Shown: piece after piece, positions 172 through 50,232 of the stretch
Layout: every line of letters begins with the position of its first letter
How positions within the stretch are numbered: the stretch's first letter is position 1
DNA from: Fimbriosthenelais zetlandica
Lineage: Eukaryota
Assembly: GCA_977030845.1 (NCBI GenBank)
Contig: OZ365113.1
Location: forward strand, 6,324,001-6,388,000
Direction: 5' to 3'
DNA length: 64,000 bases
Notes under the pieces: model-generated
The model's input: only the letters and a program-made list of their open reading frames with translations
Databases searched by the model: none
What the model was told of the DNA's origin: nothing
Program-made: the position numbers and the translations under genes

Positions 172-1440
172 TTGTCTACCATAGTGCGTCATTACAAGTG
201 TAAAACCAATCGAGCAACCATCAATGGCGATTCTATCAAGAACGCTGTTGATGCAGTCCTCAACAATGGAAAAAGTGTGCGGTCAGCTGCTAATCAATGG
301 GGTCTTTCTCATGTTACATTATCATGTTATGTGCTTCAGAAGACAAATGGGTAGCTTGATAATCCTACGTTTGGCTACTCTCATCACTGGCGAGTTTTTT
401 TCCGAGGAGCAAGAGATGGAACTTGTGAGGTACATAAAAAATGCAGCATCTATTTTTTGCGGACTCAGTCCAAAAGATATCAGGTGTATAGCCCACCTCT
501 GTGCCAAAAAGTACAACCTACAGTTGCCACTTTCGTGGGAAAAGAGGGGACAGGCAGGAGCAGATTGGTTTGCAAGTCTCGTTGCTAGACACAACCTGTC
601 AATAAGGATTCCTGAAGCGACGAGTCTGGCAAGGACATCAAGCTTCAACAAAGCAAATGTTTCCAATTTGTTCTTCAAACTGGCAGATTTAATGGATCGA
701 TACAAATTCAAACCTAAAGACATTTGGAATGTGGATGAACACGGTGTATACAGACTGTAACAAAACCCCTGAGCATTGTGGCAGCAAAGGGGACCAAGCA
801 AGTTGGACTCATCACCTTAGCTGAAAGAGGACAGCTCGTTACTCTGTGTGCAGCTGTCTGTGCTTCTGGAAATTCTGTTCCACCAATGTTCATTTTTCCC
901 AGAGTGCACTTTAAAGAACACTTCATCAGAGATGGCCCAGTTGGGTGCATCGGCACTGCCTATCAATACGGCTGGATGACTTCTGAAAGTTTTCATCTAT
1001 TCATCCAGCATTTTATTGACAATGTCAAGAAGTCAACCAAGGAAAATCCTGTTCTCCTTCTCTTAGATAACCATCAATCCCACCTCGACATCGATGTCTT
1101 GAATATGGTGAAGGAGAATGGCATTCATATGCTATCATTCCCACCACACTGTTCACATAAACTGCAACCGCTCGACATCTCAGTATTCGGCCCATTGAAG
1201 AAACTAGTTTCTTCAGCTCAAACCAGCTGGCTCAGGTCGAACCCTGGTTCCACCTTGAGTATCTACCACACCCATGCGATATTAAAGGAGACCTGGCCAA
1301 AAGCTGCAACCCCAACAAACATCATGGCTGGCTTTCGGAAGATGGGCATAAGTCCATACAATATGGACGTGTTCACTGAAGAGGACTATGCCCCATCATT
1401 TGTGACAGATCGTCCAAATCCTTGGCCTGGCGCCAACATC
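172..1440 (+). pseudogene. pogo/Tigger-type DDE transposase (HTH_psq + CENP-B HTH + DDE_1), frameshifted and 3'-truncated
   Basis: Three consecutive frames (172-354, ~360-755, ~757-1440) give psq-like HTH (AVDAVLNNGKSVRSAANQWGL), CENP-B HTH (FSEEQEMELVRYI...AGADWF) and catalytic motifs IWNVDE, LLLLDNH and QPLD. Two frameshifts; no TIR seen. Confidence 0.85.
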
Positions 1441-1854
1441 AAGAGATTGACACACATAGCCATACAAGTGGCACGTTTTTCCCCTGGCTCGCAATTTATC
1501 ATTGCTGGAGGTATTAACGATATATCCATCAGGATATAGACAAACTACCACACAACCTCACACTATAGAGAAAGCCAAGAAGGTCAAGGTGGACGGGGGA
1601 GGATTAGCATTTGAATCCCACCACATGTATCTTTCTAACCCATGTAGGCTACATGTAAGATACAAGTTGGTAACATGACAAGTTTACCATAGTTTAAAAC
1701 AGCTCTACCAGTTCAAATGCGCCAAACTATATGGGCAACCTGATAAGGCAGCCGCTATATTGAGGGCCAAAGCCGCTTATGAGGCAAAGAAAATATCATA
1801 TGAAATAAAGAAAACTGAGGAATGGAATCAGACAAAATTCGAAGCAGTGGGATG

Positions 1855-3545: not shown

Positions 3546-3645
3546 CATGCAGTGTTCAAAAAGAAAAATCGCCTTGACAAAGCAAATTACAGGCCAATCA
3601 GCATCCTACCAACTCTGTCAAAAATCTTTGAGGGAATGCTGGCTG
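3546..3645 (+). mobile_element. Non-LTR (CR1/L2-like) reverse transcriptase fragment, part 1
   Basis: ANYRPISILPTLSKIFEGML is the classic LINE RT N-terminal motif. Confidence 0.8.
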
Positions 3646-3648
3646 CTG

Positions 3649-4070
3649 ACTTCTCAGGGATATATGTAGAGGGGTAGGACCTGAGCAGAGCAGCCTCAGA
3701 GCAACCACAAGAGGTCAAGTGGTCAGTAGGAGTGGAAGATGTATGATCAAAAGCACAGGAGGGAGATAGCCATGGTACGATCCAGGTATAAGCAAAGAAA
3801 TGGTGTCAGAAGAAACAAGATAGGCCTACATTTTATTAACAAGGTACATTTTAGGTACATTTTATTAAACTAAATGTAAAGGGTTACTTTACATAAAATG
3901 GTGTCAAAAGTTGGATATCAATCAAAGATATCAGGAGTAAAATATCACCTGGATTATTAAATTTCCAATCGTAAACTTTTAAACACAGATCTATTATCTG
4001 CAGGCACAGAAAGCAACATGAAAGGACATAATTATGTATTTACTATGCAGGACTATTCTCGCACATTAAG
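3649..4070 (+). repeat. Dispersed direct repeat, copy 1 (copy 2 at 7228-7810)
   Basis: acttctcaggg..gtagaggggtaggacctgagcag... and aatggtgtca...atttccaatcg blocks recur with small indels and substitutions. Confidence 0.85.
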
Positions 4071-4639: not shown

Positions 4640-5200
4640 TACCAGATGGCATTAACAAGGAGGCCATGACAACATGGATCGAGGGAATAGATCTATAATA
4701 CAAGGGAGTGGACAAATGCTGGAGACGAGCAAGTGTTAGACATAGCACGATATATCACAGCTGGAGGCCTGGCCAACATACTCAGAGAATTCATGGTAGC
4801 AACTCCCATAGCAAATAGGACATGGGCAAATGCCAAGGAAGTGATCATCAGAGCTTTCCTAAACGAGAACGAAAAAGAATTCCTGAGGGGTAAGGTGGAT
4901 CGAATAGTTCAAACACTGAACGATGACAGCAGAGAGTACTGCCGGGGGCCGTGCAAAAGGCTTATGAGGTGGGTGAGCTGCAGAACATTTACAGATGGCT
5001 TGACAGATAGGGAGGTAAGGGCTCGTCTTCATGAACCGGCCCAACACCCTAGACACGGCTACCTATGAGGGGGATAGCAACTATGAACTTGTATGGAAAG
5101 GAAGTACAAGTGTGTCTGATGGATTTCCTGATGGGAAGTGACATTCTTATTGATGTGTTCCACACACAGATTGATTTGGAAAGAAAAAGGGTAGAACTGG
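4640..5200 (+). mobile_element. Gypsy-like gag plus protease fragments
   Basis: LREFMVATPIANRTWANAKEVIIRAFL...EYC...TFTDGLTDREVRARL (gag-like), then LYGKEVQVCLMDFLMGSDILIDVFHTQIDLE (protease C-terminal pattern). Confidence 0.55.
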
Positions 5201-5204
5201 TAAG

Positions 5205-5385
5205 CTACCCGAACAAAATACATATGGGCAAGGCCAAACATGTATTAAGGTATCTGAAGGGCACATTAAATCACGGCCTTACATTTGAAAGGTCAAAAGA
5301 TCCTTTAAGGTTAAATGGGTATTGTGATGCAGACTGGGGATCTGAAGATGATAGAAAAAGCATAACTGGATATGCTTTCCAATGA
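5205..5385 (+). mobile_element. Ty1/Copia RT-RNase H junction fragment
   Basis: HMGKAKHVLRYLKGT..GLTF...GYCDADWG...DRKSITGYAF is diagnostic for Copia. Confidence 0.9.
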
Positions 5386-7130: not shown

Positions 7131-7227
7131 ACCCTGTATGTGTACACGTACTTAGGTGAACTCTAAATATCAACAATATCCAGAGATCGCCTGAGATCCA
7201 GGGATATCCAGGGATATCCAGGGGCTA

Positions 7228-7810
7228 ACTTCTCAGGGGTATATGTAGAGGGGTAGGACCTGAGCAGGGCGGCCTCAGAGCAACCACAAGAGGTCAAGTG
7301 GTCAGTAGGAGACTAGGAGTGGAAGATGTATGATCAAAAGCTCAGGAATGAGATAGCCATGGTACGATCAAGGTATAAGCAACAGTGAAACATGGAAGAA
7401 TTGCCAAGCAAGTTTTGTAACTACAAGTGACAACGAATTGTCAAAAAGGAATCCTGGAATAAAAGATCACATCCATATATTACGATTTTAGATTTATTTA
7501 ACTATAATGGTGTCAGAAAAACAAAGAAAGAAAAGTACATTTTATTAAACTAAATGTAAAGGGTTACTTTACATAAAATGGTGTCAAAAATGGGATATCA
7601 ATCAAAGATATCAGGAGTAAAATATCACCTGGATTATTAAATTTCCAATCGCTTGGAAAACCCACGCAATGGACAGACAGTTAAAGTGTGACACTTGTAG
7701 TAAAACTTTTAAACACAGATCTAATATCTGCAGGCACAGAAAGCAACATGAAAGGGCATATGTATGTACTATGCATGACTATACTCGCACATAAAGTTTA
7801 TAATTATCCC
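7228..7810 (+). repeat. Dispersed direct repeat, copy 2
   Basis: Same blocks as 3649-4070 with extra inserted segments. Confidence 0.85.
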
Positions 7811-9690
7811 TTCCTCAAGGAGCCGATGCCATCCATGGGAGGGATAAAAACTTCAAGTTCCATCCGACACTTTAGCTGGGGAAGCCTTCTGGAAGCAGCT
7901 GCCACCAAGATGCCCACACTCCACGCTGCTGTCTGTGCAGGCGTAGGCACCAGAAACCTCAAGGCTGATGAACATGTAAAGAGGTAGGCCCTATTCAAAA
8001 ATACTGTATGGTCCTACTGCTGATACCACATATTATTACATATTACTTCTAATTGGGTAGAATTTAACCAAGGATAAAAAACACAGTACATTGCCAGTAC
8101 GTCTCAGTTGCTGATTATTTTCCTTATGTTTCAGAAAGAATCTGCAGCCATGTATTGGTCTGTTACTGGCGGTGGCCTTGTTTACACAAAAGCCCACATC
8201 ATTTAAAATGGTACAGTCCTTGTGCTCCTTGCAACTATGGAGATATGATTGTTAATTATGAACATAAGCAATACCGGTATATATTTCATGCACTATATAT
8301 GTGTCTTCATTCTGGCAGAATCAACACATATAAAACCTATTTCTCCCTTTTTCTGCTAGATGAAAATATTCGGTATGGTAGGGGCCAGCCGCCTACTATC
8401 TTATTGCCACTATGAGGAAAGATCAATCATTGTTCCATGTTACAGGTCTTCTCTTGCTTAAATAAGTTGGGAGTGTGCCTAAGCAAGACATCCACACAAG
8501 ACGTCCACACGGCGTCTTGTGGACTACCTGTGTACCCAAGTGGACGTGGACTTGAAAATGGCAAAGGATGCCGTCGAACAGGTAAAGTAATTAGTATTAA
8601 ACTTAAGTACCACTATACTTTTTTTTTGGTATTATTATTCCGAACACTTTACAACCAATACCGCCATACAGCGTTTTTCCAGGTGGTCCGTTAACATTTC
8701 TTGACATAAAAAACATTAAAAAGAAATATATATATATATATATATATATCACAAATGAATTAAATATTACTAAACCCCTCTCACCGGCCGGACATTCCTC
8801 ACCATTAGAACTCAATCGAAAGTGTAACAGGCAATTTTTCAATTGACTACCATTGACTTTTACAGGAAGCACTTCGAAAGTATGTCGTCAGGGCCAAAAC
8901 AGAGTCACGGGTCTGCCCTTAGACAGCGAGAGTGACGAGGATGACGACTTCCTCCCAACCATGGAGCAGCTGGAGTGATCCTTAAAAAGCGGCGGGAGTT
9001 TCTCAATGCTGGCAGATGTCTCTGACTTAGTAGGAGAAGGTGCGTTTATAAAACATAATTTGTGATTGTTTGTCACGAATTGCTTATACTGCACTCCTCT
9101 TGTAATGAATTCATTTTGTACATAACAATTCAGTTCATCAACTCTCATAGATTAAAAGGACTGTGTAACAAACATTTTTGATTATAATTTCAGTCCCTGC
9201 TGGATATGCGTTTGTCTGGGACAATATTCAGAAGTTATCTGTGACCAGAGATTGCGGTCTGGGGAAAGGCAACGAGATGCATATGTGAGCAAATGCCTTT
9301 GTGGTTATGAACCAGGTGCATCCCAGGGTGTCACAGAGATCGACAAATCAACTGAATGCCTCCGACATCCCCTTAACAGCATACTTCCCATCGATCCAGG
9401 ATGTGTGATATTGGCAGCCGAATGGAATGTCACGTGTCATATCTAGGATACTTGTACATCATCTGAAGTGTTTTCAGGGTTTTGCGGATGTTGTCGAATG
9501 GCATATACCTCACGAGTATTCGGATGAGATTACGAGAACCAGCTCCATCGTAAGTTTTTTAGATCTGTAGTACCATAGGCCTACATGTATGTTTGTATAG
9601 TATGTATATGTATATTATGTATATGTGTGGGTGTATACGTATGTGTGTAAATTTACATACATCAAATAAGCATCCATTTATTTCAGATAA
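7800..9690 (+). mobile_element. Intron-containing DUF6589-like (transposase-associated) gene remnant
   Basis: Exon-like pieces VFSCLNKLGVCLSKTST (~8445-8500), YAFVWDNIQKLSVTR (~9190-9250) and VISRILVHHLKCFQGFADVVEWHIPHEYSDEI (~9430-9550), separated by GT-AG bounded AT-rich segments. Confidence 0.5.
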
Positions 9691-9936
9691 TCCCCTTGGC
9701 CCTGCTGAGGGCATGACCGGTCAGATGAACAAGAGACCCCCGAGCAGAAAGACTGTACATAGGCCGCTGAGTTACTCGCCCTCACAACCTTACTGCCCGT
9801 CTCTATCATCTCACACATACTAAGTTACAGTAAGTAAATGGTATGACATACAGACTGGACATATACATACACATAGGACTGATATACATATACTCAATAT
9901 ACTGGACATATTCTACATATAGGCAAAAGTACAACA
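9689..9936 (+). repeat. 5' LTR (missing the first 64 bp)
   Basis: Identical by eye to 14539-14786; ends ...GTACAACA. Confidence 0.9.
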
Positions 9937-9937
9937 T

Positions 9938-9951
9938 TGGCGTCAGAAGTG
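9938..9951 (+). promoter_or_regulatory. Primer binding site, tRNA-Leu-like
   Basis: TGGCGTCAGAAGTG lies 1 nt after the LTR end and is close to the complement of a tRNA-Leu 3' end (...CACTTCTGACACCA). Confidence 0.75.
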
Positions 9952-10642
9952 CACGGCATCACCCACGCCGTCCTGAGGGATATACCTGCATCTGGATTGT
10001 GTGTGTTTTTTGTTTTGTTTTGTTTTTTGTCAGTTCTTGAGTCTACATATTTCCCCCGGACATTTCCACTATCACTATCATTATCGGGATCAAAGACATT
10101 GTGCCATAATTGCCCATACACCAGTCTACCAGTCATATCGCATCTTTATAATTAACCCATCATCCACGAGGTAAGATCTTGTCTTTGTCTCCACGGGACG
10201 CCATTGACCCCACGCGTGGAGTGGTATTCATATTACACGGCCAAATTAATCCATCGCCATCTCCATTCACTGATGAAAATATAGACTCAAGGAGCCATAG
10301 CTGAACATTTTTCCGGCTGAGATTCATTGTGAACCCTTTATGTTTTGTGTATTTTGGATTTGGAGGTTTTTCAAAAACACGTGCCTATAATATACATATA
10401 TTACAGTGCCTCCAGGGTGTCGGCCATTAGGCTGATATCATCACCACATGCTGGCCTAATTCCACCCCAATCCAGTTCAATTTAAGGTTACTTTCGGGTG
10501 TTTTCTAAGAGTAATTCTGTCCAGCTTTTGGCCTTATTTATTTCATGGGGGGAGGGAGTTATTCTCGGGTATTTCCTGAGACTAATTCTTGCGATTGCAT
10601 TTACTCCAAATCTGTTGGGGTACACAATAACTCTTGAGAATT

Positions 10643-11216
10643 ATTTGAGAGTTATCCTCGGATATTTTCTGAGGTTAATCCCAGGAGTTGAATAGGCCAT
10701 TCTAAATCGTATGCAATAGCTCTTGAGAATTATTTTCGGATACTTTTCTGAAAGTGGTTACTAGGCTTATGCATTTATGTGTTATCTGACAATACTTTTA
10801 TTCCTCTAGAACCAGGCAGGACAAGCTGGCAGAATTCTTGCCGGCGGAAAACCTTGTGCCTGAGAAAATGTAAATTTAGTAGTGTAGGGGCCTAGGCCTA
10901 TAGACCATGAGATAGGAATAGGCACTACATTAAATCTGGAACCAGACAGGAAAAGCTGGCAGACTTCTTGCCGGCGGTAAAACCCCTGCCTAATCTGGAA
11001 CCAGACAGGAAAAGCTGGCAGATTTCTTGCCGGCGGTAAACCCCCTGCCTAAGAAAAACATTTGAGAGTTATCCTCGGATATTTTCTGAGGTTAATCCCA
11101 GGAGTTGAATAGGCCATTCTAAATCGTATGCAATAGCTCTTGAGAATTATTTTCGGATACTTTTCTGAAAGTGGTTACTAGGCTTATGCATTTATGTGTT
11201 ATCTGACAATACTTTT
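10643..11216 (+). repeat. A-B-A duplication in the element 5' UTR: A = 157 bp (10643-10799, 11060-11216), B = 248 bp (10805-11052)
   Basis: The A copies are identical by eye; B is identical to 14051-14298. Confidence 0.9.
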
Positions 11217-11839
11217 CGGATACTTTTCTGAAAAGTGATTTCTAGGTCTATGCATTTATGTGTTATATGACAATACTTTTCAGATATTTTTCTGATACTA
11301 AAAAGTGCCTAGGATTCAGTAGCTCTGCCACCATAATTTTCGGATAGTTCTCTGAAATTTAATGTGCTTGGCCTCAGTCTTGTACTGCATGTAATTCTAC
11401 CCCACGCTGATGCCAGCTTGACACACTGTAAAACTTCATTCACGCTTTTTCTGGCATTTTCTGTCTGTTCTGACTGACAGTACCTCTACACCGTGAAGGT
11501 TCATCCTATATTGCATTGAATTATTTTCTAAGTTGTGATTTTTAATATTTCTTGTATCCCAGGTATCCTATCCTATTTTGTTCCCACACTGTAAAGCTTT
11601 GTTTTGCTACCTTTTGGCTAGAACACTTCTTACACTTCTTACACCTTCTTTTGCTATCTTATAACCTTTCCTTTTCCCTGTACACTGTAAAGCTTTGTTT
11701 TGCCATCTTATATCGTTTTCTTCCCTCCATACACTGTAGAGCTTTGCTTGGGTATTTCATAAATTCTCTGTAGTTCCTTTCTGGTTCTCCCTGTACACTG
11801 TAGATCTCTGTTTTGCTATCTTGCTATCTAAAATCTAAC

Positions 11840-13957
11840 ATGGCCCTGAATGTGAACTCTGCGACTGTGGAGGAGCTCAGTGGGCTCAAAGGCATAGGTG
11901 CCGTGTATGCTACCCGGCTAGTGGAGCTGGTGGGCGAGCATGGACCATTCCTTAATCTCCTGGCCCTGCAGGCTGTCTGTGAACCACAGCTGTCAACCAC
12001 AGTCAGCAATCTGTGCAAAGGTGGTCTGTTAACTGTATCGGCGGCAGAAGCTGATGCGGACACAGAGGCCAGCCGCTCAGAGTCTCCAGAGGTAGATGAT
12101 GACATGCAGAAGGAGATGATGGATGAGGAGGAACGGGAGGTGCACGTGGCCAAGGAGAGGAGACGGCTGGCGCTGGCAGCACTCCGGTTGAAGAATGACA
12201 GGGCCGAAAGGAGGTTGAGGGAGGAGAGGGCTGAACTGGCAGCCCTGGAAGAGGAGATTCGCCTGGAGAGAGGGAGGTGGAGACAACAGGACAAGGAAGA
12301 GGAGAATGTGACCCTTCCTGACATGCCCTATATAGCCCGGCTGCTTGCCAAGGGTAAACCCCGGGCTTCAGTTACTGCATTACCAGGACCCACACCAAGA
12401 ACCGAACCTACTGAGCTGGAAACAACAAAAGCAGAGCATGCCGCCAAGCCGAACATCCAAACTTCTTCTGACGCCCCTGGAGCTATCTTGAAGGTAGAAG
12501 AAGTGAAAGTTGAAGTAAATGAAGGGAAAAAGGTGGAAGAAGAAAGAGAGGAGGAAATGAAGGCTGAAGCGAATGAAGGGAATAAGGTGGAAGAAGAAAA
12601 AGAAGAGGAAATGAAGGCTGAAGCGAATGAAGGGGATAAGGTGGAAGAAGAAAAAGAAGAGGAAATGAAGGCTGAAGCGAATGAAGGGGATAAGGTGGAA
12701 GAAGAAAGAGAGGAGGAAATGAAGGCTGAAGCGAATGAAGGGAATAAGGTGGAAGAAGAAAAAGAAGAGGAAATGAAGGCTGAAGCGAATGAAGGGGATA
12801 AGGTGGAAGAAGAAAAAGAAGAGGAAATGAAGGCTGAAGTAAATGAAGGGAAAAAGGTGGAAGAAGAAAGAGAGGAGGAAATGAAGGCTGAAGTGAATGA
12901 AGGGAATAAGGTGGAAGAAGAAAGAGAGGAGGAAATGAAGGTGAACTATATATGTCATGAGGAGGACGGGGAAGTGGGAATGGCAAAGCAGGAGGATGGG
13001 GAAGAGAAGCAGGAAGAGACAGCTCGGGATGAACGCAGGGCTCCAAGGAGGGAACAAGACATGCCTTCCTTTGACGAGAAGAAAGAGAAGATCATCACTG
13101 AGAAAGTGAAAGAGAAAGAGAAGATCATCACTGCGCAGGTGAAAGAGAAAGAGAAGATCATCACTGAACAGGTGAAAGAGAAAGATAACATCATCACTGA
13201 ACAGGTGAAAGAGAAAGAGAACGTCATCACTGAACAGGTGAAAGAGAAAGATAACATCATCACTGAACAGGTGAAAGAGGAAGAGAAAGAGAACATCATC
13301 ACTGAACAAGTGAAAGAGGAAGAGAAAGAGAACATCATCACTGAACAGGTGAAAGAGAAAGAGAACATAAACACGGAACAGGAGAAAGAGAAAGAGAACA
13401 TCATCACTGAACAGGTGAAAGAGAACATCATCACTGAGCAGGTGAAAGAGGAAGGGAAAGAGAACATCACAGAACAGGTGACACAGGCTAAGCAGAAGAA
13501 GATGGCAATTCAAGTACCACAACAGGTGAATAAAAAGAAATTAAATTGTGCCTCAGTCACATGTGGTGCCGAAATAGTTGCGGCTAAGTCAGAGGCCAAG
13601 AGAATAACATCTGTTTGCAATGAAATCGGTGGCCAGTTCATGGTATGCGAGCCTTGTCAAGTTAAGAAGCCTGAGCCTGAGCCGTCTACTGGAGGCCTTA
13701 TTCTAGAAGCTTTCAGGCCAGGTGCTGAGGCAACTAACCTGGGCCCCAGACACTCCACCTTGCGCAAAGGGGATTTCATGGGATTGGTTGACCCAGCAGA
13801 GGATCTCCACTTATCTGCTCACCTTTTGGCCAAAATCGGAGCATTTGCCTCCAGAGGGCCCACTCAGGACACATCGGGACATGCCAAGCCTGGGTCGTTA
13901 GCAAATGACCAGGGTAAGGTGGCCACGAGCAGTGCTCGAGGGTTCTTCGGGTTTTAA
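11840..13957 (+). CDS. LTR-element ORF (705 aa): N-terminal helix-hairpin-helix (HHH_3/ComEA-like), coiled coil, 18-aa and ~11-aa acidic repeats, C-terminal Gypsy PR-RT linker-like remnant
   Basis: Good Kozak context (aacATGG); LNVNSATVEELSGLKGIGAVYATRLV is an HhH signature; uninterrupted frame; C-terminal ...KSE...CEP...GGLIL...TNL...LRKGDFMG..DPAE. Confidence 0.75.
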   Translation: MALNVNSATVEELSGLKGIGAVYATRLVELVGEHGPFLNLLALQAVCEPQLSTTVSNLCKGGLLTVSAAEADADTEASRSESPEVDDDMQKEMMDEEEREVHVAKERRRLALAALRLKNDRAERRLREERAELAALEEEIRLERGRWRQQDKEEENVTLPDMPYIARLLAKGKPRASVTALPGPTPRTEPTELETTKAEHAAKPNIQTSSDAPGAILKVEEVKVEVNEGKKVEEEREEEMKAEANEGNKVEEEKEEEMKAEANEGDKVEEEKEEEMKAEANEGDKVEEEREEEMKAEANEGNKVEEEKEEEMKAEANEGDKVEEEKEEEMKAEVNEGKKVEEEREEEMKAEVNEGNKVEEEREEEMKVNYICHEEDGEVGMAKQEDGEEKQEETARDERRAPRREQDMPSFDEKKEKIITEKVKEKEKIITAQVKEKEKIITEQVKEKDNIITEQVKEKENVITEQVKEKDNIITEQVKEEEKENIITEQVKEEEKENIITEQVKEKENINTEQEKEKENIITEQVKENIITEQVKEEGKENITEQVTQAKQKKMAIQVPQQVNKKKLNCASVTCGAEIVAAKSEAKRITSVCNEIGGQFMVCEPCQVKKPEPEPSTGGLILEAFRPGAEATNLGPRHSTLRKGDFMGLVDPAEDLHLSAHLLAKIGAFASRGPTQDTSGHAKPGSLANDQGKVATSSARGFFGF
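12500..12940 (+). repeat. 54-bp coding minisatellite (VEEEKEEEMKAEANEGDK), about 8 units
   Basis: Direct inspection of the DNA and the translation. Confidence 0.9.
13080..13480 (+). repeat. 27-39-bp coding minisatellite (KEKENIITEQV), about 12 units
   Basis: Direct inspection; all unit lengths are multiples of 3. Confidence 0.9.
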
Positions 13958-14050
13958 CCTGAGGAGCCCTGCCTGAACTGTACATAAGTAAATCTATTAG
14001 TGTAAACCATAGCATAGGAGTAGGGACAGGAATAGGCATTAGGGACTAGA

Positions 14051-14298
14051 TCTAGAACCAGGCAGGACAAGCTGGCAGAATTCTTGCCGGCGGAAAACCT
14101 TGTGCCTGAGAAAATGTAAATTTAGTAGTGTAGGGGCCTAGGCCTATAGACCATGAGATAGGAATAGGCACTACATTAAATCTGGAACCAGACAGGAAAA
14201 GCTGGCAGACTTCTTGCCGGCGGTAAAACCCCTGCCTAATCTGGAACCAGACAGGAAAAGCTGGCAGATTTCTTGCCGGCGGTAAACCCCCTGCCTAA
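14051..14298 (+). repeat. Block B in the element 3' UTR (three copies of a ~50-nt CTGGCAGAnTTCTTGCCGGCGG motif)
   Basis: Identical to 10805-11052. Confidence 0.9.
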
Positions 14299-14306
14299 TA
14301 AAAAAC

Positions 14307-14458
14307 AGTGCTGACATCATATGGCGGACGACACCTCAGAGCCCTAGCTGGGTAACCATCCCCGGCGACAAAGGCCTTCAAGAGTGCTGACGTAATATGG
14401 CAGACGTCACCCCGGGGCCCTAGCTGGGTAACCACCCCCGGCGCCAAAGGCCTTCAAA
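14307..14458 (+). repeat. 76-bp tandem repeat x2 just before the PPT
   Basis: agtgctgac...gccctagctgggtaacca..cccggcg.caaaggccttcaa occurs twice. Confidence 0.85.
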
Positions 14459-14474
14459 AGAAAACGGGGGAGAA
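14456..14474 (+). promoter_or_regulatory. Polypurine tract
   Basis: aaaagaaaacgggggagaa directly abuts the TGT start of the 3' LTR. Confidence 0.8.
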
Positions 14475-14786
14475 TGTAGTACGCGAGCAGGGAACCCCCT
14501 GTGTGACGTCACTGAGCGGTCAGGCCCTCAGAGCCGGGAATCCCCTTGGCCCTGCTGAGGGCATGACCGGTCAGATGAACAAGAGACCCCCGAGCAGAAA
14601 GACTGTACATAGGCCGCTGAGTTACTCGCCCTCACAACCTTACTGCCCGTCTCTATCATCTCACACATACTAAGTTACAGTAAGTAAATGGTATGACATA
14701 CAGACTGGACATATACATACACATAGGACTGATATACATATACTCAATATACTGGACATATTCTACATATAGGCAAAAGTACAACA
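14475..14786 (+). repeat. Complete 3' LTR (312 bp) containing a CRE palindrome (14504-14511)
   Basis: TGTAGTAC...GTACAACA termini, preceded by the PPT. Confidence 0.9.
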
Positions 14787-15653
14787 GACTCACACACGTT
14801 TATCCCAAATCTAAAGTAGTTAAGAAGTTCTTTAATTAAGTTTACACTAAGTACCGGTATACTAAAGTATGATTATAGGCTCTACTCTACTAGTCTTTAG
14901 GCCTTAGTTTCTAATCAACGTGACTTCGGAGTACCGGTAATGTAATTTTCATCTTTAAATTCGAATTCCTACCTGTAGACATACTCACCCTGCACCCCTC
15001 AAATGCAGAACGGAAATGGGAAGAAAAAATGGTAAAACACACATCCATGCTGCCGCCCCGTTACAACGCCAGCCCTCGCTGAGACAGCAATCTAGTTTTT
15101 GACATTTATTCCTTGGCTATTTTCACAAAGATCCCTTGGTTTGTCAAATATAAAAAGTGAGTATACAATAAATCAATCATGTTTTGTTCACATTATTGAG
15201 TATTAAATGTCATAGACAAATAGATAATTTATTATTCACTATATTCCCTATTATCGCTCAAAGAAAGTGTGCCTTTGGCTTTAGTGGCTTTAGCCTTTAC
15301 GGCTTTAGTATGGCTTTACTGCCTAGGCCGAGGCTCGAGAAAGTACGGTAGGCCAACAGTTGACTCCTGAGATGTTGAATATTTAACAAAAAGATAGGCC
15401 TATATCATGCATAGCCTACTAGTGTAGGCCTCCCGGGGTAGGCCTGAACAATATCCGCTTTCCTTAAATTTTATGTTAATCCGAAACAAAAATAACTTGT
15501 TTTTGCCTAACCGGGAGAAGATTTCCCTCCACCGGCTGGGGTTTAAGAAACAGATAGGACTGATATAATAGTCCTATGGAAGACTAATACCAGGGATATC
15601 ATAGCATAAAAGACTAAGTGTAAGCCTAATGCTTTTCAATTTCACTTTTCCAG

Positions 15654-15855
15654 ATGGCGCCACCGGAGTCCATGAAAGCTACTTTGATGAAGCAGGGAGC
15701 TGAGGCTAAGCTGTTCACTGGGACTTTCCTGGGGCGACCTGTAGTCATTAAGGAAAGATTCAAGAAGGCCTACCGCCACCCTAGCCTTGATAAAAGTCTC
15801 ACTAGTCAAAGAACCAAGTCTGAAGTCCGCTCCATGATGAGATGCAGAGCCAATG
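15654..15855 (+). CDS. TP53RK: EKC/KEOPS complex kinase Bud32/TP53RK, coding exon 1
   Basis: MKQGAEAKLF.G.FLGRPVVIKERFKKAYRHPSLDKSLT..RTKSEVRSM.RCR; phase-1 GT donor at 15856; the ATG directly follows a ttttccag acceptor, implying an upstream UTR exon. Confidence 0.93.
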
Positions 15856-16487: not shown

Positions 16488-16969
16488 GAATTGCAACCCC
16501 TGCCATTTACTTTGTGGACGAAACAGAGAACAAAATCTACATGGAGCATTTAACCGACAGCCAAACCGTCCGGGACTATGTGCGACAAGTTCAGACGAAA
16601 CCGAACAACGACCGAGACGCCCTCCTCCACTCACTCGGCAGGAAAATGGGCGACGCCATCGGTAAAATGCACGAGAAAAATATAATTCACGGAGACCTGA
16701 CTACGTCTAATATGTTACTACGTGGAAACGGTCTCGAGCTTGTCATGATTGACTTTGGTTTGGGTTATATTGACAACGTAGCTGAGGATAAGGGAGTAGA
16801 CTTGTATGTATTAGAGAGGGCTTTGCTCAGCACTCATCCAAACACAGAGAAGTTGTTTGAAGTTATCCTTGACGCGTATAAAAAAACAAACCCCACAGGC
16901 GCCACGGAAGTGATCAAGAAGTTAGAAGAGGTGCGCATGCGCGGACGAAAACGAACAATGGTTGGTTGA
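16488..16969 (+). CDS. TP53RK: Bud32/TP53RK, coding exon 2 (227 aa in total)
   Basis: tttcag acceptor; IIHGDLTTSNMLL, IDFGLG, AEDKGVDLYVLERA and VRMRGRKRTMVG* motifs. Confidence 0.95.
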
Positions 16970-31212: not shown

Positions 31213-31400
31213 TCAATATAGTCCACAGCCTCTCAGGTTGTTGGCAATGATCACATCTGTCACTGCGTCAAACACGAATTGGATATTATTCGTATCTGTA
31301 GCGCAAGTTTGGTGGCAGTAGATCTCTTTTGTTGTGCTCTTATTCTTGGCCTCAAACTGGGCTTGGATGTAGGCAGCGGCTTCTTCGTATATTTGCTTAC
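31213..31400 (-). CDS. GNAO1: G protein alpha-o, exon 8 (188 nt incl. stop)
   Basis: [34 protein letters not shown]; C-terminal CGLY pertussis-toxin site typical of Go. Confidence 0.97.
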
Positions 31401-31450
31401 CTGTAAGACGATCATATTGAATTATAGTATTGTTTTCTGATTTGTAACCA

Positions 31451-31811
31451 CAGGGTTCGTAGACTTGGAGGAAACCAAAATTCCAGGAGTTTTCAAGGAT
31501 AAATTTAGATTTTTCAAGAACTAAAATTTCGCACATATTAGGTTTTTCTCCATCTTTTATGTACAAAAAGGAAAAAGACTGAACTGTTTCAGAATCCATT
31601 CCCCTGGACCCATAATTGACACGACTCATCCACAAAATAACAAATCTTTGAATTTGACATGTTACATAAACACCTAAGGCATTTCTATTAACCAAGGCAT
31701 TTTAACATTTCTCCAGGTGATTGCAGGAGTTTGATTGGGTTTTCAGGAATTTCCAGTACAGGAAAATACATTTCTGATTTCCCAGGAATTTCCAGTAGTC
31801 AACGAACCCTG
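31451..31811. mobile_element. Non-autonomous DNA transposon with CAGGG termini and a 5-bp TSD (AACCA)
   Basis: cagggttcgtagac...gtcaacgaaccctg, with aacca on both sides. Confidence 0.7.
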
Positions 31812-47135: not shown

Positions 47136-49460
47136 ATTTAACTCACCTGTCCTCTCAGTTCATAATGATCGGATATAATTTAATAAAAATCTTTTAAGAA
47201 TGTTTTGATATGGTATATAGATCAAATAATGGAGAATCATCCAACTAAAGAATTAAGTTATTAATGTATCTAGATATGAATAATAATCTAATAATTTGAA
47301 AACAATTTTAGCATTAAATTTCTAGGGGTTGTGGTATGGGGGTCGGATCAAGTATACTAAGCCATCCGATCACACGAATCCGATTCTCTATCCGTCGCCA
47401 TCCAATAGCTGTCCAAAACTATATATTTCTATTCCCGGCAAGTATTTTAGTATACATGTAATTATTTGTGATAAATATTCAGGTCAGAACACGGTGAATA
47501 ACATCACATCAAATAGTTGTCGTTCTGTGCAACATTGTATACAACTAAATATTGAATGATAATGCTCAAAATAACAAGTAATTCTATCGTGATATCTATT
47601 GGTTTGTACTAAATATATGTAAATAATATGTATTATTATCAAATAAAAGAGGCTTTCTCCGTGAGAATTAATTTAAGTCATAGTTCTCTACAATGGATAG
47701 ATGGACGATTATTTGTTTGAATTCCCGTCAGAAATGTTTTAGTGATATCAGGATGAGAAGGAAACAGGCTGTTGGTACACAATGGCCTGCTCGTCTTAAA
47801 CGGTAGTAATAGTTCTTTCAATGCCCCCACAGCAGACAGTGAGACAATGGATGAATTAATGAATAGTTGTTTTACGAAATGCCAGCTATTAAACTATCAA
47901 AACTAGAACATACATGTATACTAATCCGATTCTCCAATCCGTCGCCATCCGATCCCCCATTTCTAATGCATCCAATGATAGTTGGTTAGCCTAAGCTAGG
48001 TGTTACAATTATTTGCTCTGAATAGAAATATAGTCTCAGACAGCTATCGGATGGCGCCGGATAGAGAATCTGATTAATTTGGGGTGAGCAGTGGGAGAGA
48101 TGGCTGGCATTTGATATCCCAGTTAGCAGCACTGGGTTGGGAAATGTTCTAATACTCTTATTTCAATTTAAACCATGCAGTCACTTTGCATCCAATACAT
48201 ATATCTAGAGCATGAGTTTTTATCATTTGCAAATCTTAATTGCTCACAAGAGGGCGAAAGGAAGGGGAAGGACACTGCTTCTATAGATATTACAAGCAGG
48301 AAACCTGTTGGGGACTGCTTTTCTCTATGGATGAGTGGATTTGGACACACGCTTGGAAGGGTTCCCAGAGATGGTCGGGGAGAGATAATTCCATGCACCG
48401 TGAAATATAGGCCTATGTATTTAGAACCGACTCAAGGAAATATAAAGTTTCAATATAAACCTATTTTAAACTTAAAATAATGCAGGCTATTTATCTGAAT
48501 GCTTAATTCATATAATATTATAGCTATTTTAAACTTTCAATATTGCAGGCTATAATTTATCTGAATGCTGAATGCGGATAAAATCATATGAGACTATAGG
48601 GCCTGGAGAACACTAATCGATTCTCTATCCGGCTCCATCCTATAGCTGTTCGAAACTTTATTTCTATTCAGACCAAATGCTTTTAATTTGAACAGAACTT
48701 TACACCTAAGGCCAGAGAAACTACTGTAACTGGGTTCTAGTCTCTCTGGTAAGGCTAACCACTGACAAAATTTCAATCTTTAGATGTCATATTCTTCATA
48801 GTGTAATTTCCATGGATAGGTAAAATTCGTTAACAAATCATTTGTTTAATTTTCTGTCACTGATTTCTCAGCTATATCAAAGGACGTGGAGAAGCATTTT
48901 TTTATCGGCATTTTCAACAGTATTTTTCATCTGCATTTTTCAACAGTAGTGACACGAAGAAAGATTAATGGACATATTTCTTAAGTTTTGAGGTACAAGT
49001 TGTTATATAAATATGGAATAAAACTAGAAATTGATCTGCTCGAGCATATACATGGGTCGCACTCGCGATTAACTACATGTTTTCACCCCTTGTGCGACCC
49101 ATCTGCTCTCACAGATCAGTCTCGTTGTATACCATATTTATTAAGTATATCAACACTTCCAGAAATGGTTTGAATCACGTTGTCTCGTAAAAAAGACATG
49201 ATGAGGTTTTGTTATTATGTAATTAACAATGAGCTCGACATGATTAAATTACAGGTTATGGGTAAAGCGCAATGAGCAAAAGGAGTTATGCAATGAGGTA
49301 ATGGCCGGCTTTGTGTCAACGTCAGGTCAAAAAGTTACCAGCTATCTTAGGACACGAGGAAACACGCTGTCGGCACACAATGGTGTACTCCTCTCGAATG
49401 GTTCTTTTACATGCCCCTTCACCAGACAGTGTGAGTCAGTGATATGTGAGACATGACAGT

Positions 49461-49812
49461 GTGAGACATGACTGGCCTTATACATGCCTCCCACCACAGA
49501 CAATGTGAGACATGACTGGCCTTATACATGCCTCTCACCACAGACAATGTGAGACATGACTGGCCTTATACATGCCTCTCACCACAGACAGTGTGAGACA
49601 TGACTGGCCATATACATGCCTCCCACCACAGACAATGTGAGACATGACTGGCCTTATACCTGCCTCCCACCACAGTCAATGTGAGACATGACTGGCCTTA
49701 TACATGCCTCTCACCACAGACAGTGTGAGACATGACTGGCCTTATACATGCCTCCAACCACAGACAGTGTGAGACATGACTGGCCTTTGACATGCCCATC
49801 AGAATAGACAGT
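49461..49812. repeat. 44-bp minisatellite x8
   Basis: gtgagacatgactggccttatacatgcctcccaccacagacaat starts at 49461, 49505, 49549, 49593, 49637, 49681, 49725 and 49769. Confidence 0.95.
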
Positions 49813-50232
49813 ATGAGACATGGCTGGACTTTGATATCCCAGTTAGCAGCACTGGGTGGAGAAAGGCAATATTGGTAAATTCGAGTCGAACATACTATTT
49901 CCTGAACCAGGCTGGGGTTTGAGGAAAAACGTGTTCACTATGTATACATAATATTATATACAGAAATAATGAGTAGATTTCTGAGTGAAGTGAGATATAT
50001 CAAAAAATGAATGGCAAAAATGTGCTTTTCATTATTTAATGTGAAAGAACTTTCTCGCTTTTAAGCGATCATCACACCATCGCTTTTAAGCGATCATCAC
50101 ATAATATTATGTGGATATTTTTCCTAAGCTGTAGGCCTATGACACATTAAACTTGGTAGGCTCCTACTGTTTTTTACTTCGACCGCTGAATAATAGAACC
50201 TGCGTGGACCATTTCGTTTTTTTTTGTGCTCA

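What the first reader, a model, noticed from the sequence alone, without database searches (positions are those of the whole stretch)
9689..14786. Young non-autonomous LTR element carrying an intact HhH / coiled-coil / acidic-repeat protein instead of gag-pol
Seen: all cis signals are intact (identical LTR segments, tRNA-Leu-like PBS, PPT), so the insertion is recent. The only ORF (705 aa) lacks capsid, zinc knuckle, protease, RT, RNase H and integrase. It keeps an N-terminal HhH module, a coiled coil, ~8 x 18-aa and ~12 x 9-13-aa Glu/Lys repeats, and a C-terminus resembling the Gypsy PR-RT linker. Every repeat unit length is a multiple of 3 and there is no stop in 2.1 kb, which suggests selection on the protein. 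Established: HhH is a non-specific nucleic-acid-binding fold (ComEA-like); from recall it also occurs at the N-terminus of some invertebrate Gypsy Gags. Inference: a satellite retroelement mobilised in trans whose protein could (a) co-assemble with helper particles and favour its own RNA, (b) act as a dominant-negative restriction factor, or (c) be an acidic nucleic-acid mimic or disordered scaffold. This is the best candidate for an undescribed system in the window.
Basis: partly seen in the sequence, partly recalled or inferred. Interest (0 to 1): 0.82.

Follow-up and report, generated by a model that had tools for sequence, protein, structure and literature searches.

The report
Pol-less LTR element carrying HhH protein
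A recently inserted retrovirus-like mobile element in an animal genome has lost every gene needed to copy itself. It carries instead one intact gene for a DNA/RNA-binding, self-associating, very acidic protein with no known relatives; this is unusual but a variant of known defective or gene-carrying LTR elements.

Summary
The structure is real. A 312-nt 3' LTR (14475-14786, TGTAGTAC...GTACAACA) follows a retrovirus-type polypurine tract, and its last 248 nt are repeated exactly at 9689-9936. A primer-binding site next to that copy matches 13 of 14 nt of tRNA-Leu(CAA). One 705-codon ORF (11840-13957) lies between, and no gag or pol remnant occurs in any frame. The ORF is genuine coding sequence. 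Its non-repeat ends are open against chance (P about 5e-5 and 2.5e-4), and the N-terminus passes Pfam's threshold for a ComEA-type HhH domain.

Not everything is intact. The 5' LTR has 115 unrelated nt where the 3' LTR has 56, there is no target-site duplication, and the leader carries a duplication-insertion scar. No support was found for a Gypsy-like C-terminus or for HhH in Gag proteins.

A new finding is that all 18 upstream ATGs lie between the strongest splice donor (10171) and a cluster of acceptors (11480-11803). The flanking leader is ATG-free, which suggests translation from a spliced subgenomic mRNA.

No other copy, parent gene or helper element could be found with the collections available. 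Family status, selection and function therefore remain untested. I read it as a non-autonomous LTR retroelement with a cargo or accessory gene.

The parts
9566..9573 (+). TGTAGTAC, probable 5' terminus of the 5' LTR
   Evidence: It is the same octamer as the start of the 3' LTR. There are only two occurrences in 64 kb on both strands, 1.27 expected.
9574..9688 (+). 115-nt TG/TA-rich block standing where the 3' LTR has 56 different nt
   Evidence: The alignment of the two LTR starts shows no homology. The only Rfam hit is a weak mir-297 match below threshold.
9689..9936 (+). 5' LTR, the part identical to the 3' LTR (248 nt, 100%)
9938..9951 (+). Primer-binding site TGGCGTCAGAAGTG, tRNA-Leu(CAA)-like
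   Evidence: It lies one base after the LTR end. It matches 13/14 the reverse complement of ...CCCACTTCTGACACCA.
9846..10170 (+). ATG-free leader segment (putative 5' UTR exon 1), ending at the donor GAG|GTAAGA
   Evidence: 0 ATG against about 8 expected. The donor at 10171 is the best-scoring in the whole 5' region.
10171..11803 (+). Putative leader intron (acceptor candidates at 11480, 11562, 11621, 11739, 11803) holding all 18 upstream ATGs; also a candidate packaging region
   Evidence: The splicing itself is inferred and has not been seen in RNA.
10643..10799 (+). R1, 157 nt, identical to R1' at 11060-11216
10805..11058 (+). X copy in the leader, 254 nt, 253/254 identical to 14051-14304; lies between R1 and R1'
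   Evidence: The R1-X-R1' layout reads as a duplication-insertion scar.
11060..11216 (+). R1'
11413..11839 (+). ATG-free, pyrimidine-rich stretch before the start codon (putative 5' UTR exon 2), with repeated CACTGTA(A/G)AG motifs
   Evidence: 0 ATG against 5 expected, P 0.0025; sequence
11840..13957 (+). ORF, 705 aa, start context AACATGG
11846..12037 (+). ComEA-type (HhH)2 domain, residues 3-66. The first hairpin GIG is intact and the second is degenerate.
   Evidence: Pfam HHH_3. The best single-domain matches are about 30 bits to bacterial ComEA-like domains. PDB hits are EEPD1 and ComEA.
12098..12307 (+). Long helix / coiled coil, residues 87-156
   Evidence: AlphaFold2 pLDDT 90-98 over this stretch
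12496..12945 (+). 8.4 copies of 54 nt (18-aa Glu/Lys units)
13080..13458 (+). About 11-12 copies of 33/39 nt (9-13-aa units, EKENIITEQVK)
13472..13954 (+). Unique C-terminal 161 aa with five Cys; no relatives and no confident fold
14025..14304 (+). 3' UTR tandem units (X = 14051-14304), each with the hairpin GCTGGCAGAnTTCTTGCCGGC
14307..14457 (+). 2 copies of 76 nt with CRE-like TGACGTAA / GACGTCAC motifs
14456..14474 (+). Polypurine tract AAAAGAAAACGGGGGAGAA
   Evidence: it directly abuts the TG of the 3' LTR
14475..14786 (+). 3' LTR, 312 nt, TGTAGTAC...GTACAACA (7/8 terminal inverted repeat)

Best explanation
This is a recently integrated, non-autonomous LTR retroelement with a retrovirus-like layout. 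The order is LTR, tRNA-Leu primer-binding site, splice donor, long repeat-rich intron-like leader, splice acceptors, one ORF, a hairpin-repeat 3' UTR, polypurine tract, LTR. It has no gag or pol, so any movement must use capsid, reverse transcriptase and integrase supplied by another element.

The unspliced RNA would be the transposition intermediate. The ORF is most likely translated from a spliced subgenomic mRNA, because splicing removes all 18 upstream ATGs.

The ORF is a cargo or accessory gene and is not a gag derivative. It encodes a backbone-binding (HhH)2 nucleic-acid-binding domain, an oligomerising coiled coil and about 320 residues of Glu/Lys repeats.

I favour acquisition of the internal region by reverse-transcriptase template switching, that is LTR-mediated capture as in oncogene transduction, Bs1 or LTR-mediated retroposition. 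The same copy carries a further template-switch-type scar (R1-X-R1').

Shown: the anatomy, the absence of gag/pol, real coding capacity, the HhH domain and the ATG distribution. Inferred: splicing, trans-mobilisation, capture origin and what the protein does.
For: LTR, primer-binding site and polypurine tract sit in the correct relative positions with TG...CA ends. There is no gag/pol in any frame. The non-repeat parts of the ORF are open at P 5e-5 and 2.5e-4, and the HHH_3 hit is above Pfam's gathering score with the N-x-N-[ST]-A, GIG and HGPF motifs intact.

The best donor is at 10171. All upstream ATGs lie within 10273-11410. The flanking 427-nt stretches are both ATG-free, against about 10 and 5 expected (P<0.0005 and 0.0025).

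The R1-X-R1' arrangement has 100% / 99.6% identical parts. ComEA-type (HhH)2 domains are known in a metazoan host protein, EEPD1 (PMC12988330). They were not found in retroelement proteins. Chimeras of LTR elements with captured mRNAs that then behave as non-autonomous elements are documented in insects, fish and birds (PMC5131818).
Against: No parent gene or any homologue of the N- or C-terminal parts was found among billions of proteins. Capture therefore has no identified source.

Documented captures usually keep gag/pol remnants and truncated mRNAs. Here there are no remnants and the ORF is complete.

Splicing is predicted from sequence only. There is only one copy, so trans-mobilisation is unproven. 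The 5' LTR is altered and there is no target-site duplication. Three separate perfectly identical repeat pairs could partly reflect assembly error.
Confidence: 0.55

Rival explanations
1. The ORF is native to a retroelement lineage. It would be an accessory or env-position gene, or a radically replaced gag, kept after deletion of gag-pol. In that case the element is a true satellite family whose own nucleic-acid-binding oligomer helps it exploit, or interferes with, a helper element.
For: The ORF is complete with a good start context. It sits just upstream of the polypurine tract, where retroviral env and accessory genes lie. It appears to be served by a donor after the primer-binding site and by acceptors before the ATG, with an ATG-cleared leader. 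That pattern suggests long-term adaptation of the transcript as a unit. Spliced accessory proteins of LTR retrotransposons exist, for example Cer1 CERV (PMC10309623). No cellular parent was found.
Against: No related ORF was found in any retroelement or virus collection. There is no capsid-like or zinc-knuckle region. No second copy or helper is known. ATG-free leaders are equally expected from an inherited retroelement leader joined to a captured 5' UTR.
Confidence: 0.3
2. This is a one-off dead chimera. A single aberrant reverse-transcription product integrated once, and its ORF is open only because the insertion is young. The protein has no role for element or host.
For: Only one copy is seen. 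The LTR halves are identical, so there has been too little time for decay. The 5' LTR is altered, there is no target-site duplication and the leader carries an internal rearrangement scar. The repeat arrays carry no information on selection.
Against: The HhH signature residues are intact. Both leader segments are significantly cleared of ATGs. This argues that the source transcript was under selection for translation until recently.
Confidence: 0.1
3. This is not a mobile element. It would be an ordinary intronless host gene that happens to lie between duplicated segments, or duplicated segments created by mis-assembly.
For: Three repeat pairs are 99.6-100% identical, there is no target-site duplication, and no other copies were found.
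Against: A tRNA-complementary site sits one base after one repeat (13/14). A retrovirus-type polypurine tract directly abuts TG at the other, with matching TGTAGTAC/GTACAACA ends. This combination is very unlikely without retroelement ancestry.
Confidence: 0.05

Closest known systems
LTR-mediated retrocopies / 'pseudo-LTR retrotransposons' (Tan et al. 2016, PMC5131818; maize Bs1)
   Same: A foreign coding sequence sits between LTR-element ends and replaces the element's own genes. They arise by reverse-transcriptase template switches, are co-transcribed with the LTR and can be re-mobilised as non-autonomous elements.
   Different: No parent gene has been identified. No gag/pol remnant is left. 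The ORF is complete, not a partial mRNA piece. The leader is 1.9 kb and looks spliced.
Non-autonomous LTR elements (LARD, TRIM, TR-GAG; ETn/VL30 in mouse, from my own knowledge)
   Same: They have LTRs, a primer-binding site and a polypurine tract without pol, and depend on a helper.
   Different: LARD, TRIM, ETn and VL30 have no protein-coding ORF. TR-GAG elements encode Gag. This element encodes an intact non-Gag protein.
Replication-defective transducing retroviruses and retroviral accessory genes expressed from spliced mRNA (general knowledge); Cer1 CERV (PMC10309623)
   Same: The splice donor lies downstream of the primer-binding site, the acceptor lies before a 3' ORF, and the unspliced RNA serves as the genome.
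   Different: No gag-pol is present at all. There is no sequence or fold relation to any known accessory protein. Splicing is only predicted.
ComEA-type (HhH)2 domains: bacterial ComEA, metazoan EEPD1 (PDB 8dss, 9yi2; PMC12988330)
   Same: The N-terminal 65 residues match the domain, with about 35-49% identity to single bacterial domains. This is a sequence-independent nucleic-acid backbone-binding fold.
   Different: There is a single domain with a degenerate second hairpin. It is fused to a coiled coil and acidic repeats. It has no membrane anchor (ComEA) and no EEP domain (EEPD1).
LINE-1 ORF1p (analogy only, from my own knowledge)
   Same: It pairs a coiled-coil oligomerisation region with a nucleic-acid-binding domain, encoded by a retroelement in place of a canonical Gag.
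   Different: The binding fold is unrelated (RRM/CTD against HhH), the element class differs and there is no homology.

Membership tests
LTR retrotransposon / endogenous retrovirus-like element (structural definition) | Two direct long terminal repeats | tested here: met
   248 nt are 100% identical. The full 3' LTR is 312 nt. The 5' LTR differs in a 56- vs 115-nt block.
LTR retrotransposon / endogenous retrovirus-like element (structural definition) | TG...CA termini with a short inverted repeat | tested here: met
   TGTAGTAC...GTACAACA matches 7/8. The octamer recurs at 9566.
LTR retrotransposon / endogenous retrovirus-like element (structural definition) | Primer-binding site complementary to a tRNA 3' end next to the 5' LTR | tested here: met
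   It matches 13/14 a mammalian tRNA-Leu-CAA 3' end. The host's own tRNA was not available, and there is no tRNA gene in the window.
LTR retrotransposon / endogenous retrovirus-like element (structural definition) | Polypurine tract abutting the 3' LTR | tested here: met
   The tract at 14456-14474 has 18 of 19 purines.
LTR retrotransposon / endogenous retrovirus-like element (structural definition) | Target-site duplication of 4-6 bp | tested here: not met
   The flanks are AGATC and GACTC, or CAGAT and GACTC if the LTR is taken from 9689.
Autonomous Ty3/Gypsy, BEL/Pao, Copia or retrovirus | gag and pol (protease, RT, RNase H, integrase) | tested here: not met
   Pfam scans of the ORF and of 63 other-frame segments gave nothing. 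Superfamily assignment is therefore impossible from this copy.
TR-GAG | The internal ORF is a Gag (capsid and/or zinc knuckle) | tested here: not met
   There is no Gag family hit. No capsid-like fold was predicted, but the models are weak outside the helix.
LARD / TRIM | No protein-coding capacity in the internal region | tested here: not met
   There is a 705-aa ORF with a Pfam domain and openness beyond chance.
LTR-mediated retrocopy of a host gene | The internal sequence derives from an identifiable, intron-containing parent gene | tested here: inconclusive
   No homologue was found. The source genome itself could not be searched.
LTR-mediated retrocopy of a host gene | Microsimilarity at the junctions between element and mRNA | not testable with these tools
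   This needs both the parent mRNA and the progenitor element.
Satellite (helper-dependent, multi-copy) retroelement family | Several copies sharing junctions, and an autonomous partner with the same LTR and primer-binding site | not testable with these tools
   There is no copy in the window or in the viral, metagenome or prokaryote collections. The host genome was not available.
HHH_3 / ComEA-type (HhH)2 domain | Score above the Pfam gathering threshold and conserved hairpin motifs | tested here: met
   31.5 bits against 27. N-x-N-S-A, GIG and HGPF are present. The second hairpin lacks GIG.
EEPD1 | Two (HhH)2 domains plus a C-terminal EEP domain | tested here: not met
   There is only one HhH domain and no EEP domain.

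The most novel reading that the evidence does not exclude
The element is one member of a living family of satellite retroelements that have replaced gag-pol with their own ComEA-type nucleic-acid-binding, coiled-coil, polyacidic protein made from a spliced mRNA. That protein would act on the helper's particles or on the element's hairpin-repeat RNA, either to get the satellite packaged or to restrict the helper. This would be a protein-encoding parasite of LTR retrotransposons with a domain not previously seen in retroelements.
Probability: 0.15. Interest if true: 0.75.

Novelty: new variant of a known kind. Interest (0 to 1): 0.4.

Why it matters
Non-autonomous LTR elements are usually non-coding or keep only gag. 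One that carries an intact, apparently translatable gene for a DNA/RNA-binding oligomer would show one of two things. Either retroelements in animals shuttle whole genes around, or a parasite-of-a-parasite makes its own protein.

It also sits 868 nt upstream of a TP53RK-like gene on the same strand, so its LTR could affect that gene. On present evidence, from one copy only, it is a moderately interesting curiosity and not a new system.

Tried and rejected
**Homology searches.** Three word-indexed protein searches found nothing: the N-terminal region, the C-terminal region and the C-terminus alone. A full HMMER scan of 1.84 billion representatives with residues 1-95 returned only bacterial multi-HhH ComEA-like proteins, ranked high because their domains add up.

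**Copy and partner searches.**
- Exact-product look-ups of the 705- and 714-aa forms found nothing on record.
- Scans of viral, metagenome and prokaryote genome collections, with protein patterns and with the LTR-PBS junction, gave no match.
- blastn and tblastn of the element against the rest of the window gave no match.

**RNA families and structure.**
- Rfam gave nothing above threshold.
- Single-sequence AlphaFold2 was confident only for the helix at residues 87-156. The C-terminus had pLDDT 46, so I did not run fold searches.

**Readings considered and rejected.**
- An LTR of only 248 nt starting at 9689. It has no TG, no inverted repeat and no adjacent purine tract.
- An LTR starting at 14309 or 14051. 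The purine tract and the terminal match are poorer.
- A DIRS/Ngaro split-direct-repeat layout. The order of the repeats does not fit.
- An Env-like reading. I saw no signal peptide or hydrophobic segment by eye; no predictor was run.
- The within-array substitution pattern as a test of selection. There are too few changes and they are mixed.


Full report
**What is in the sequence**

The window is a TE-rich animal locus. It holds a pogo-type DDE_1 remnant, a TP53RK-like kinase gene and a G-alpha exon. Within 9566-14786 there are three pairs of near-perfect direct repeats:
- 9689-9936 = 14539-14786 (248 nt, 100%)
- 10805-11058 = 14051-14304 (254 nt, 253/254)
- 10643-10799 = 11060-11216 (157 nt, 100%)

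No other part of the 64-kb window resembles the element at the DNA or protein level.

**LTR anatomy**

Upstream of the 3' 248-nt repeat lies AAAAGAAAACGGGGGAGAA (14456-14474), an A-run followed by a G-run as in retroviral polypurine tracts. It is followed directly by TGTAGTAC (14475). The repeat ends in GTACAACA, whose reverse complement matches TGTAGTAC at 7 of 8 positions. The 3' LTR is therefore 14475-14786, 312 nt.

One base after the 5' repeat comes TGGCGTCAGAAGTG (9938-9951). This equals the reverse complement of the 3' end of tRNA-Leu-CAA (...CCCACTTCTGACACCA, as printed in PMC10359600) at 13 of 14 positions. The mismatch is at the discriminator base. I could not check the host's own tRNA, and the window holds no tRNA gene. 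Together these signals make retroelement ancestry hard to doubt.

**The two LTRs are not fully alike**

The first 64 nt of the 3' LTR are not found before 9689. Only the terminal octamer TGTAGTAC recurs, at 9566. These are the only two occurrences in the window on either strand, against 1.27 expected anywhere. After it come 115 nt of TG/TA-rich sequence where the 3' LTR has 56 different nt, including the palindrome TGACGTCA.

The flanks (AGATC before 9566, GACTC after 14786) give no target-site duplication. The claim that all cis signals are intact is therefore too strong. The 5' U3 region has been altered since integration, the assembly is wrong there, or the octamer is a coincidence and the LTR is simply truncated.

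**No gag or pol**

The ORF hits only HHH_3 in Pfam. I scanned 63 stop-to-stop segments of 35 aa or more from the other frames of 9400-15100. They gave nothing better than E 0.03 to irrelevant families. The element cannot supply its own capsid, reverse transcriptase or integrase.

**The ORF**

From the ATG at 11840 (context AACATGG) it encodes 705 aa:
- Residues 3-66 form a ComEA-type (HhH)2 domain. Pfam gives E 1.9e-7 and 31.5 bits against a gathering score of 27. The N-x-N-S-A, GIG and HGPF motifs are intact and the second hairpin is degenerate.
- Residues 76-100 are acidic.
- Residues 87-156 form one long helix with pLDDT 90-98.
- Residues 160-225 are Pro/Thr-rich.
- Next come 8.4 copies of an 18-aa Glu/Lys unit, an acidic linker, and about 12 units of 9-13 aa (EKENIITEQVK).
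- The protein ends in a unique 161-aa tail with five cysteines.

The arrays do not show selection by being open. They contain only 10-11% T, and all three minus-strand frames are open across them as well. The few differences between units are a mix of synonymous and non-synonymous changes. The non-repeat parts are another matter. Shuffles leave the N-terminal 225 codons open in 5e-5 of trials and the C-terminal 161 codons in 2.5e-4. The ORF is real coding sequence, or was until very recently.

**Relatives of the protein**

I found none. Word-indexed searches of 5.8 billion clusters found nothing with the N-terminal region, the C-terminal region or the C-terminus alone. They did not even return the protein itself, so this ORF is not annotated in the collection.

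A full HMMER scan of 1.84 billion representatives with residues 1-95 gave 331 hits. All eight of the top hits that I read and the ten that I scanned are bacterial-type proteins with 3-7 tandem HHH_3 domains, some with SLBB, T2SSK or GmrSD_C domains. Their high ranks come from summed domains. The best single domain scores about 30 bits.

Among solved structures the best matches are metazoan EEPD1 (9yi2, E 3.6e-4) and ComEA (8dss). EEPD1 is a host protein whose tandem (HhH)2 domains bind double-stranded DNA (PMC12988330). The C-terminus matches nothing and folds with pLDDT 46.

Full-text searches returned nothing relevant. The one paper holding 'helix-hairpin-helix', 'LTR retrotransposon' and 'gag' uses the term for a helical hairpin in Cer1 CERV. 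None of the twelve listed titles from the ComEA-plus-retrotransposon search concerns such a domain.

**New observation: the leader looks spliced**

The 1.9-kb leader holds 18 ATGs, all followed by short ORFs. All of them lie between 10273 and 11410. The 427 nt from 9846 to 10272 have no ATG against about 10 expected from dinucleotide-preserving shuffles (P<0.0005). The 427 nt from 11413 to 11839 have none against about 5 expected (P 0.0025).

The best 5' splice-site match of the whole 5' region, GAG|GTAAGA, lies at 10171, about 220 nt after the primer-binding site. Five pyrimidine-tract-plus-YAG acceptor candidates lie at 11480-11803. Splicing between them would remove every upstream ATG, so that 11840 becomes the first AUG.

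This is the retroviral arrangement: donor after the primer-binding site, unspliced RNA as genome, spliced RNA for a 3' gene. It indicates that the transcript was shaped for translation of this ORF. It remains a prediction from sequence.

**Scars and RNA elements**

X, a 254-nt block made of units carrying the hairpin GCTGGCAGAnTTCTTGCCGGC, occurs in the 3' UTR and again in the leader. In the leader it is bracketed by the two identical R1 copies. R1-X-R1' is the layout expected if reverse transcriptase jumped from the leader to the 3' UTR and back while re-copying R1. Mis-assembly is the alternative.

The 3' UTR folds somewhat better than shuffles (z = -3.35). In the three hairpins of X the stem is invariant and only one loop base varies. 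That is too little variation to count as evidence for the structure. Rfam recognises nothing.

**How it most likely works**

Shown: the element is an LTR retroelement without gag and pol, with a real ORF that has a nucleic-acid-binding domain and a long helix.

Inferred:
- The full-length RNA is reverse-transcribed and integrated only with proteins from an autonomous element.
- The ORF is translated from a spliced RNA.
- The protein binds nucleic acid without sequence specificity through the HhH domain and oligomerises through the helix.

For the origin of the ORF I favour capture by template switching. Such chimeras are documented in flies, mosquito, zebrafish and chicken and can be re-mobilised (PMC5131818). 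The domain is of a cellular type, not a retroelement type, and this copy shows another template-switch-like scar.

Three points count against capture. No parent gene was found, no gag/pol remnants are left, and the ORF is complete. The main rival, a native accessory or gag-replacing gene of a satellite family, fits the tidy expression architecture at least as well. I put capture or cargo at about 0.55 including the structural core, and the native satellite reading at about 0.3.

**Limits**

None of the collections I could scan holds the host genome or related eukaryotic repeats. Searches were all negative. Copy number, helper element, selection across copies and expression are therefore untested.

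**Verdict**

This is a new variant of a known kind: a non-autonomous or gene-carrying LTR element. It has an unusual protein and a likely spliced leader. Interest is moderate, at 0.4. It would rise substantially if a conserved multi-copy family were found.

Noticed in passing
window 3645-4038 and 7224-7768: A second, older LTR-like pair, 88-98% identical in pieces with indels. It encloses decayed ORF fragments (4733-5385) that give no Pfam hit. It has no DNA similarity to the element studied.
   Followed up: partly
window 15654-15855 and 16488-16969 (+): A TP53RK/PRPK-like kinase gene in two exons (donor AATG|GTAGG, acceptor TTTCAG|GA). It starts 868 nt downstream of the 3' LTR on the same strand, so the LTR could act on its promoter.
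   Followed up: partly
window 9409-9686: An exon-like open stretch (9409-9549) ends in the consensus donor GTAAGT at 9550. An acceptor-like TTTATTTCAG lies at 9677-9686, right at the 5' edge of the element. This may be an intron of an upstream gene or TE, or chance.
   Followed up: no
window 10805-11058 and 14051-14304: Each X copy has three hairpins GCTGGCAGA[A/C/T]TTCTTGCCGGC with an invariant 7-bp stem and a variable loop base. The single difference between the two X copies turns AAGAAA (leader) into AATAAA (3' UTR, 14296-14301).
   Followed up: partly
window 14307-14509: CRE-like motifs (TGACATCA, TGACGTAA, GACGTCAC, TGACGTCA) occur in the two 76-nt repeats upstream of the polypurine tract and in the first 40 nt of the 3' LTR. 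The latter part is missing from the 5' LTR.
   Followed up: no
window 224-1539 (+): A pogo/Tigger-type DDE_1 transposase remnant (Pfam E 1.5e-17 for 778-1536).
   Followed up: no
window 31216-31695 (-): An ORF piece matching the C-terminal end of a G-protein alpha subunit (Pfam G-alpha E 2.4e-12, just under the gathering score).
   Followed up: no
window 49411-49894: A tandem array of about 8 copies of a 44-nt unit.
   Followed up: no
window 9581-9661: A weak Rfam mir-297 match (33.5 bits against a gathering score of 90) in the TG/TA-rich block at the 5' edge. It is most likely a low-complexity artefact.
   Followed up: no
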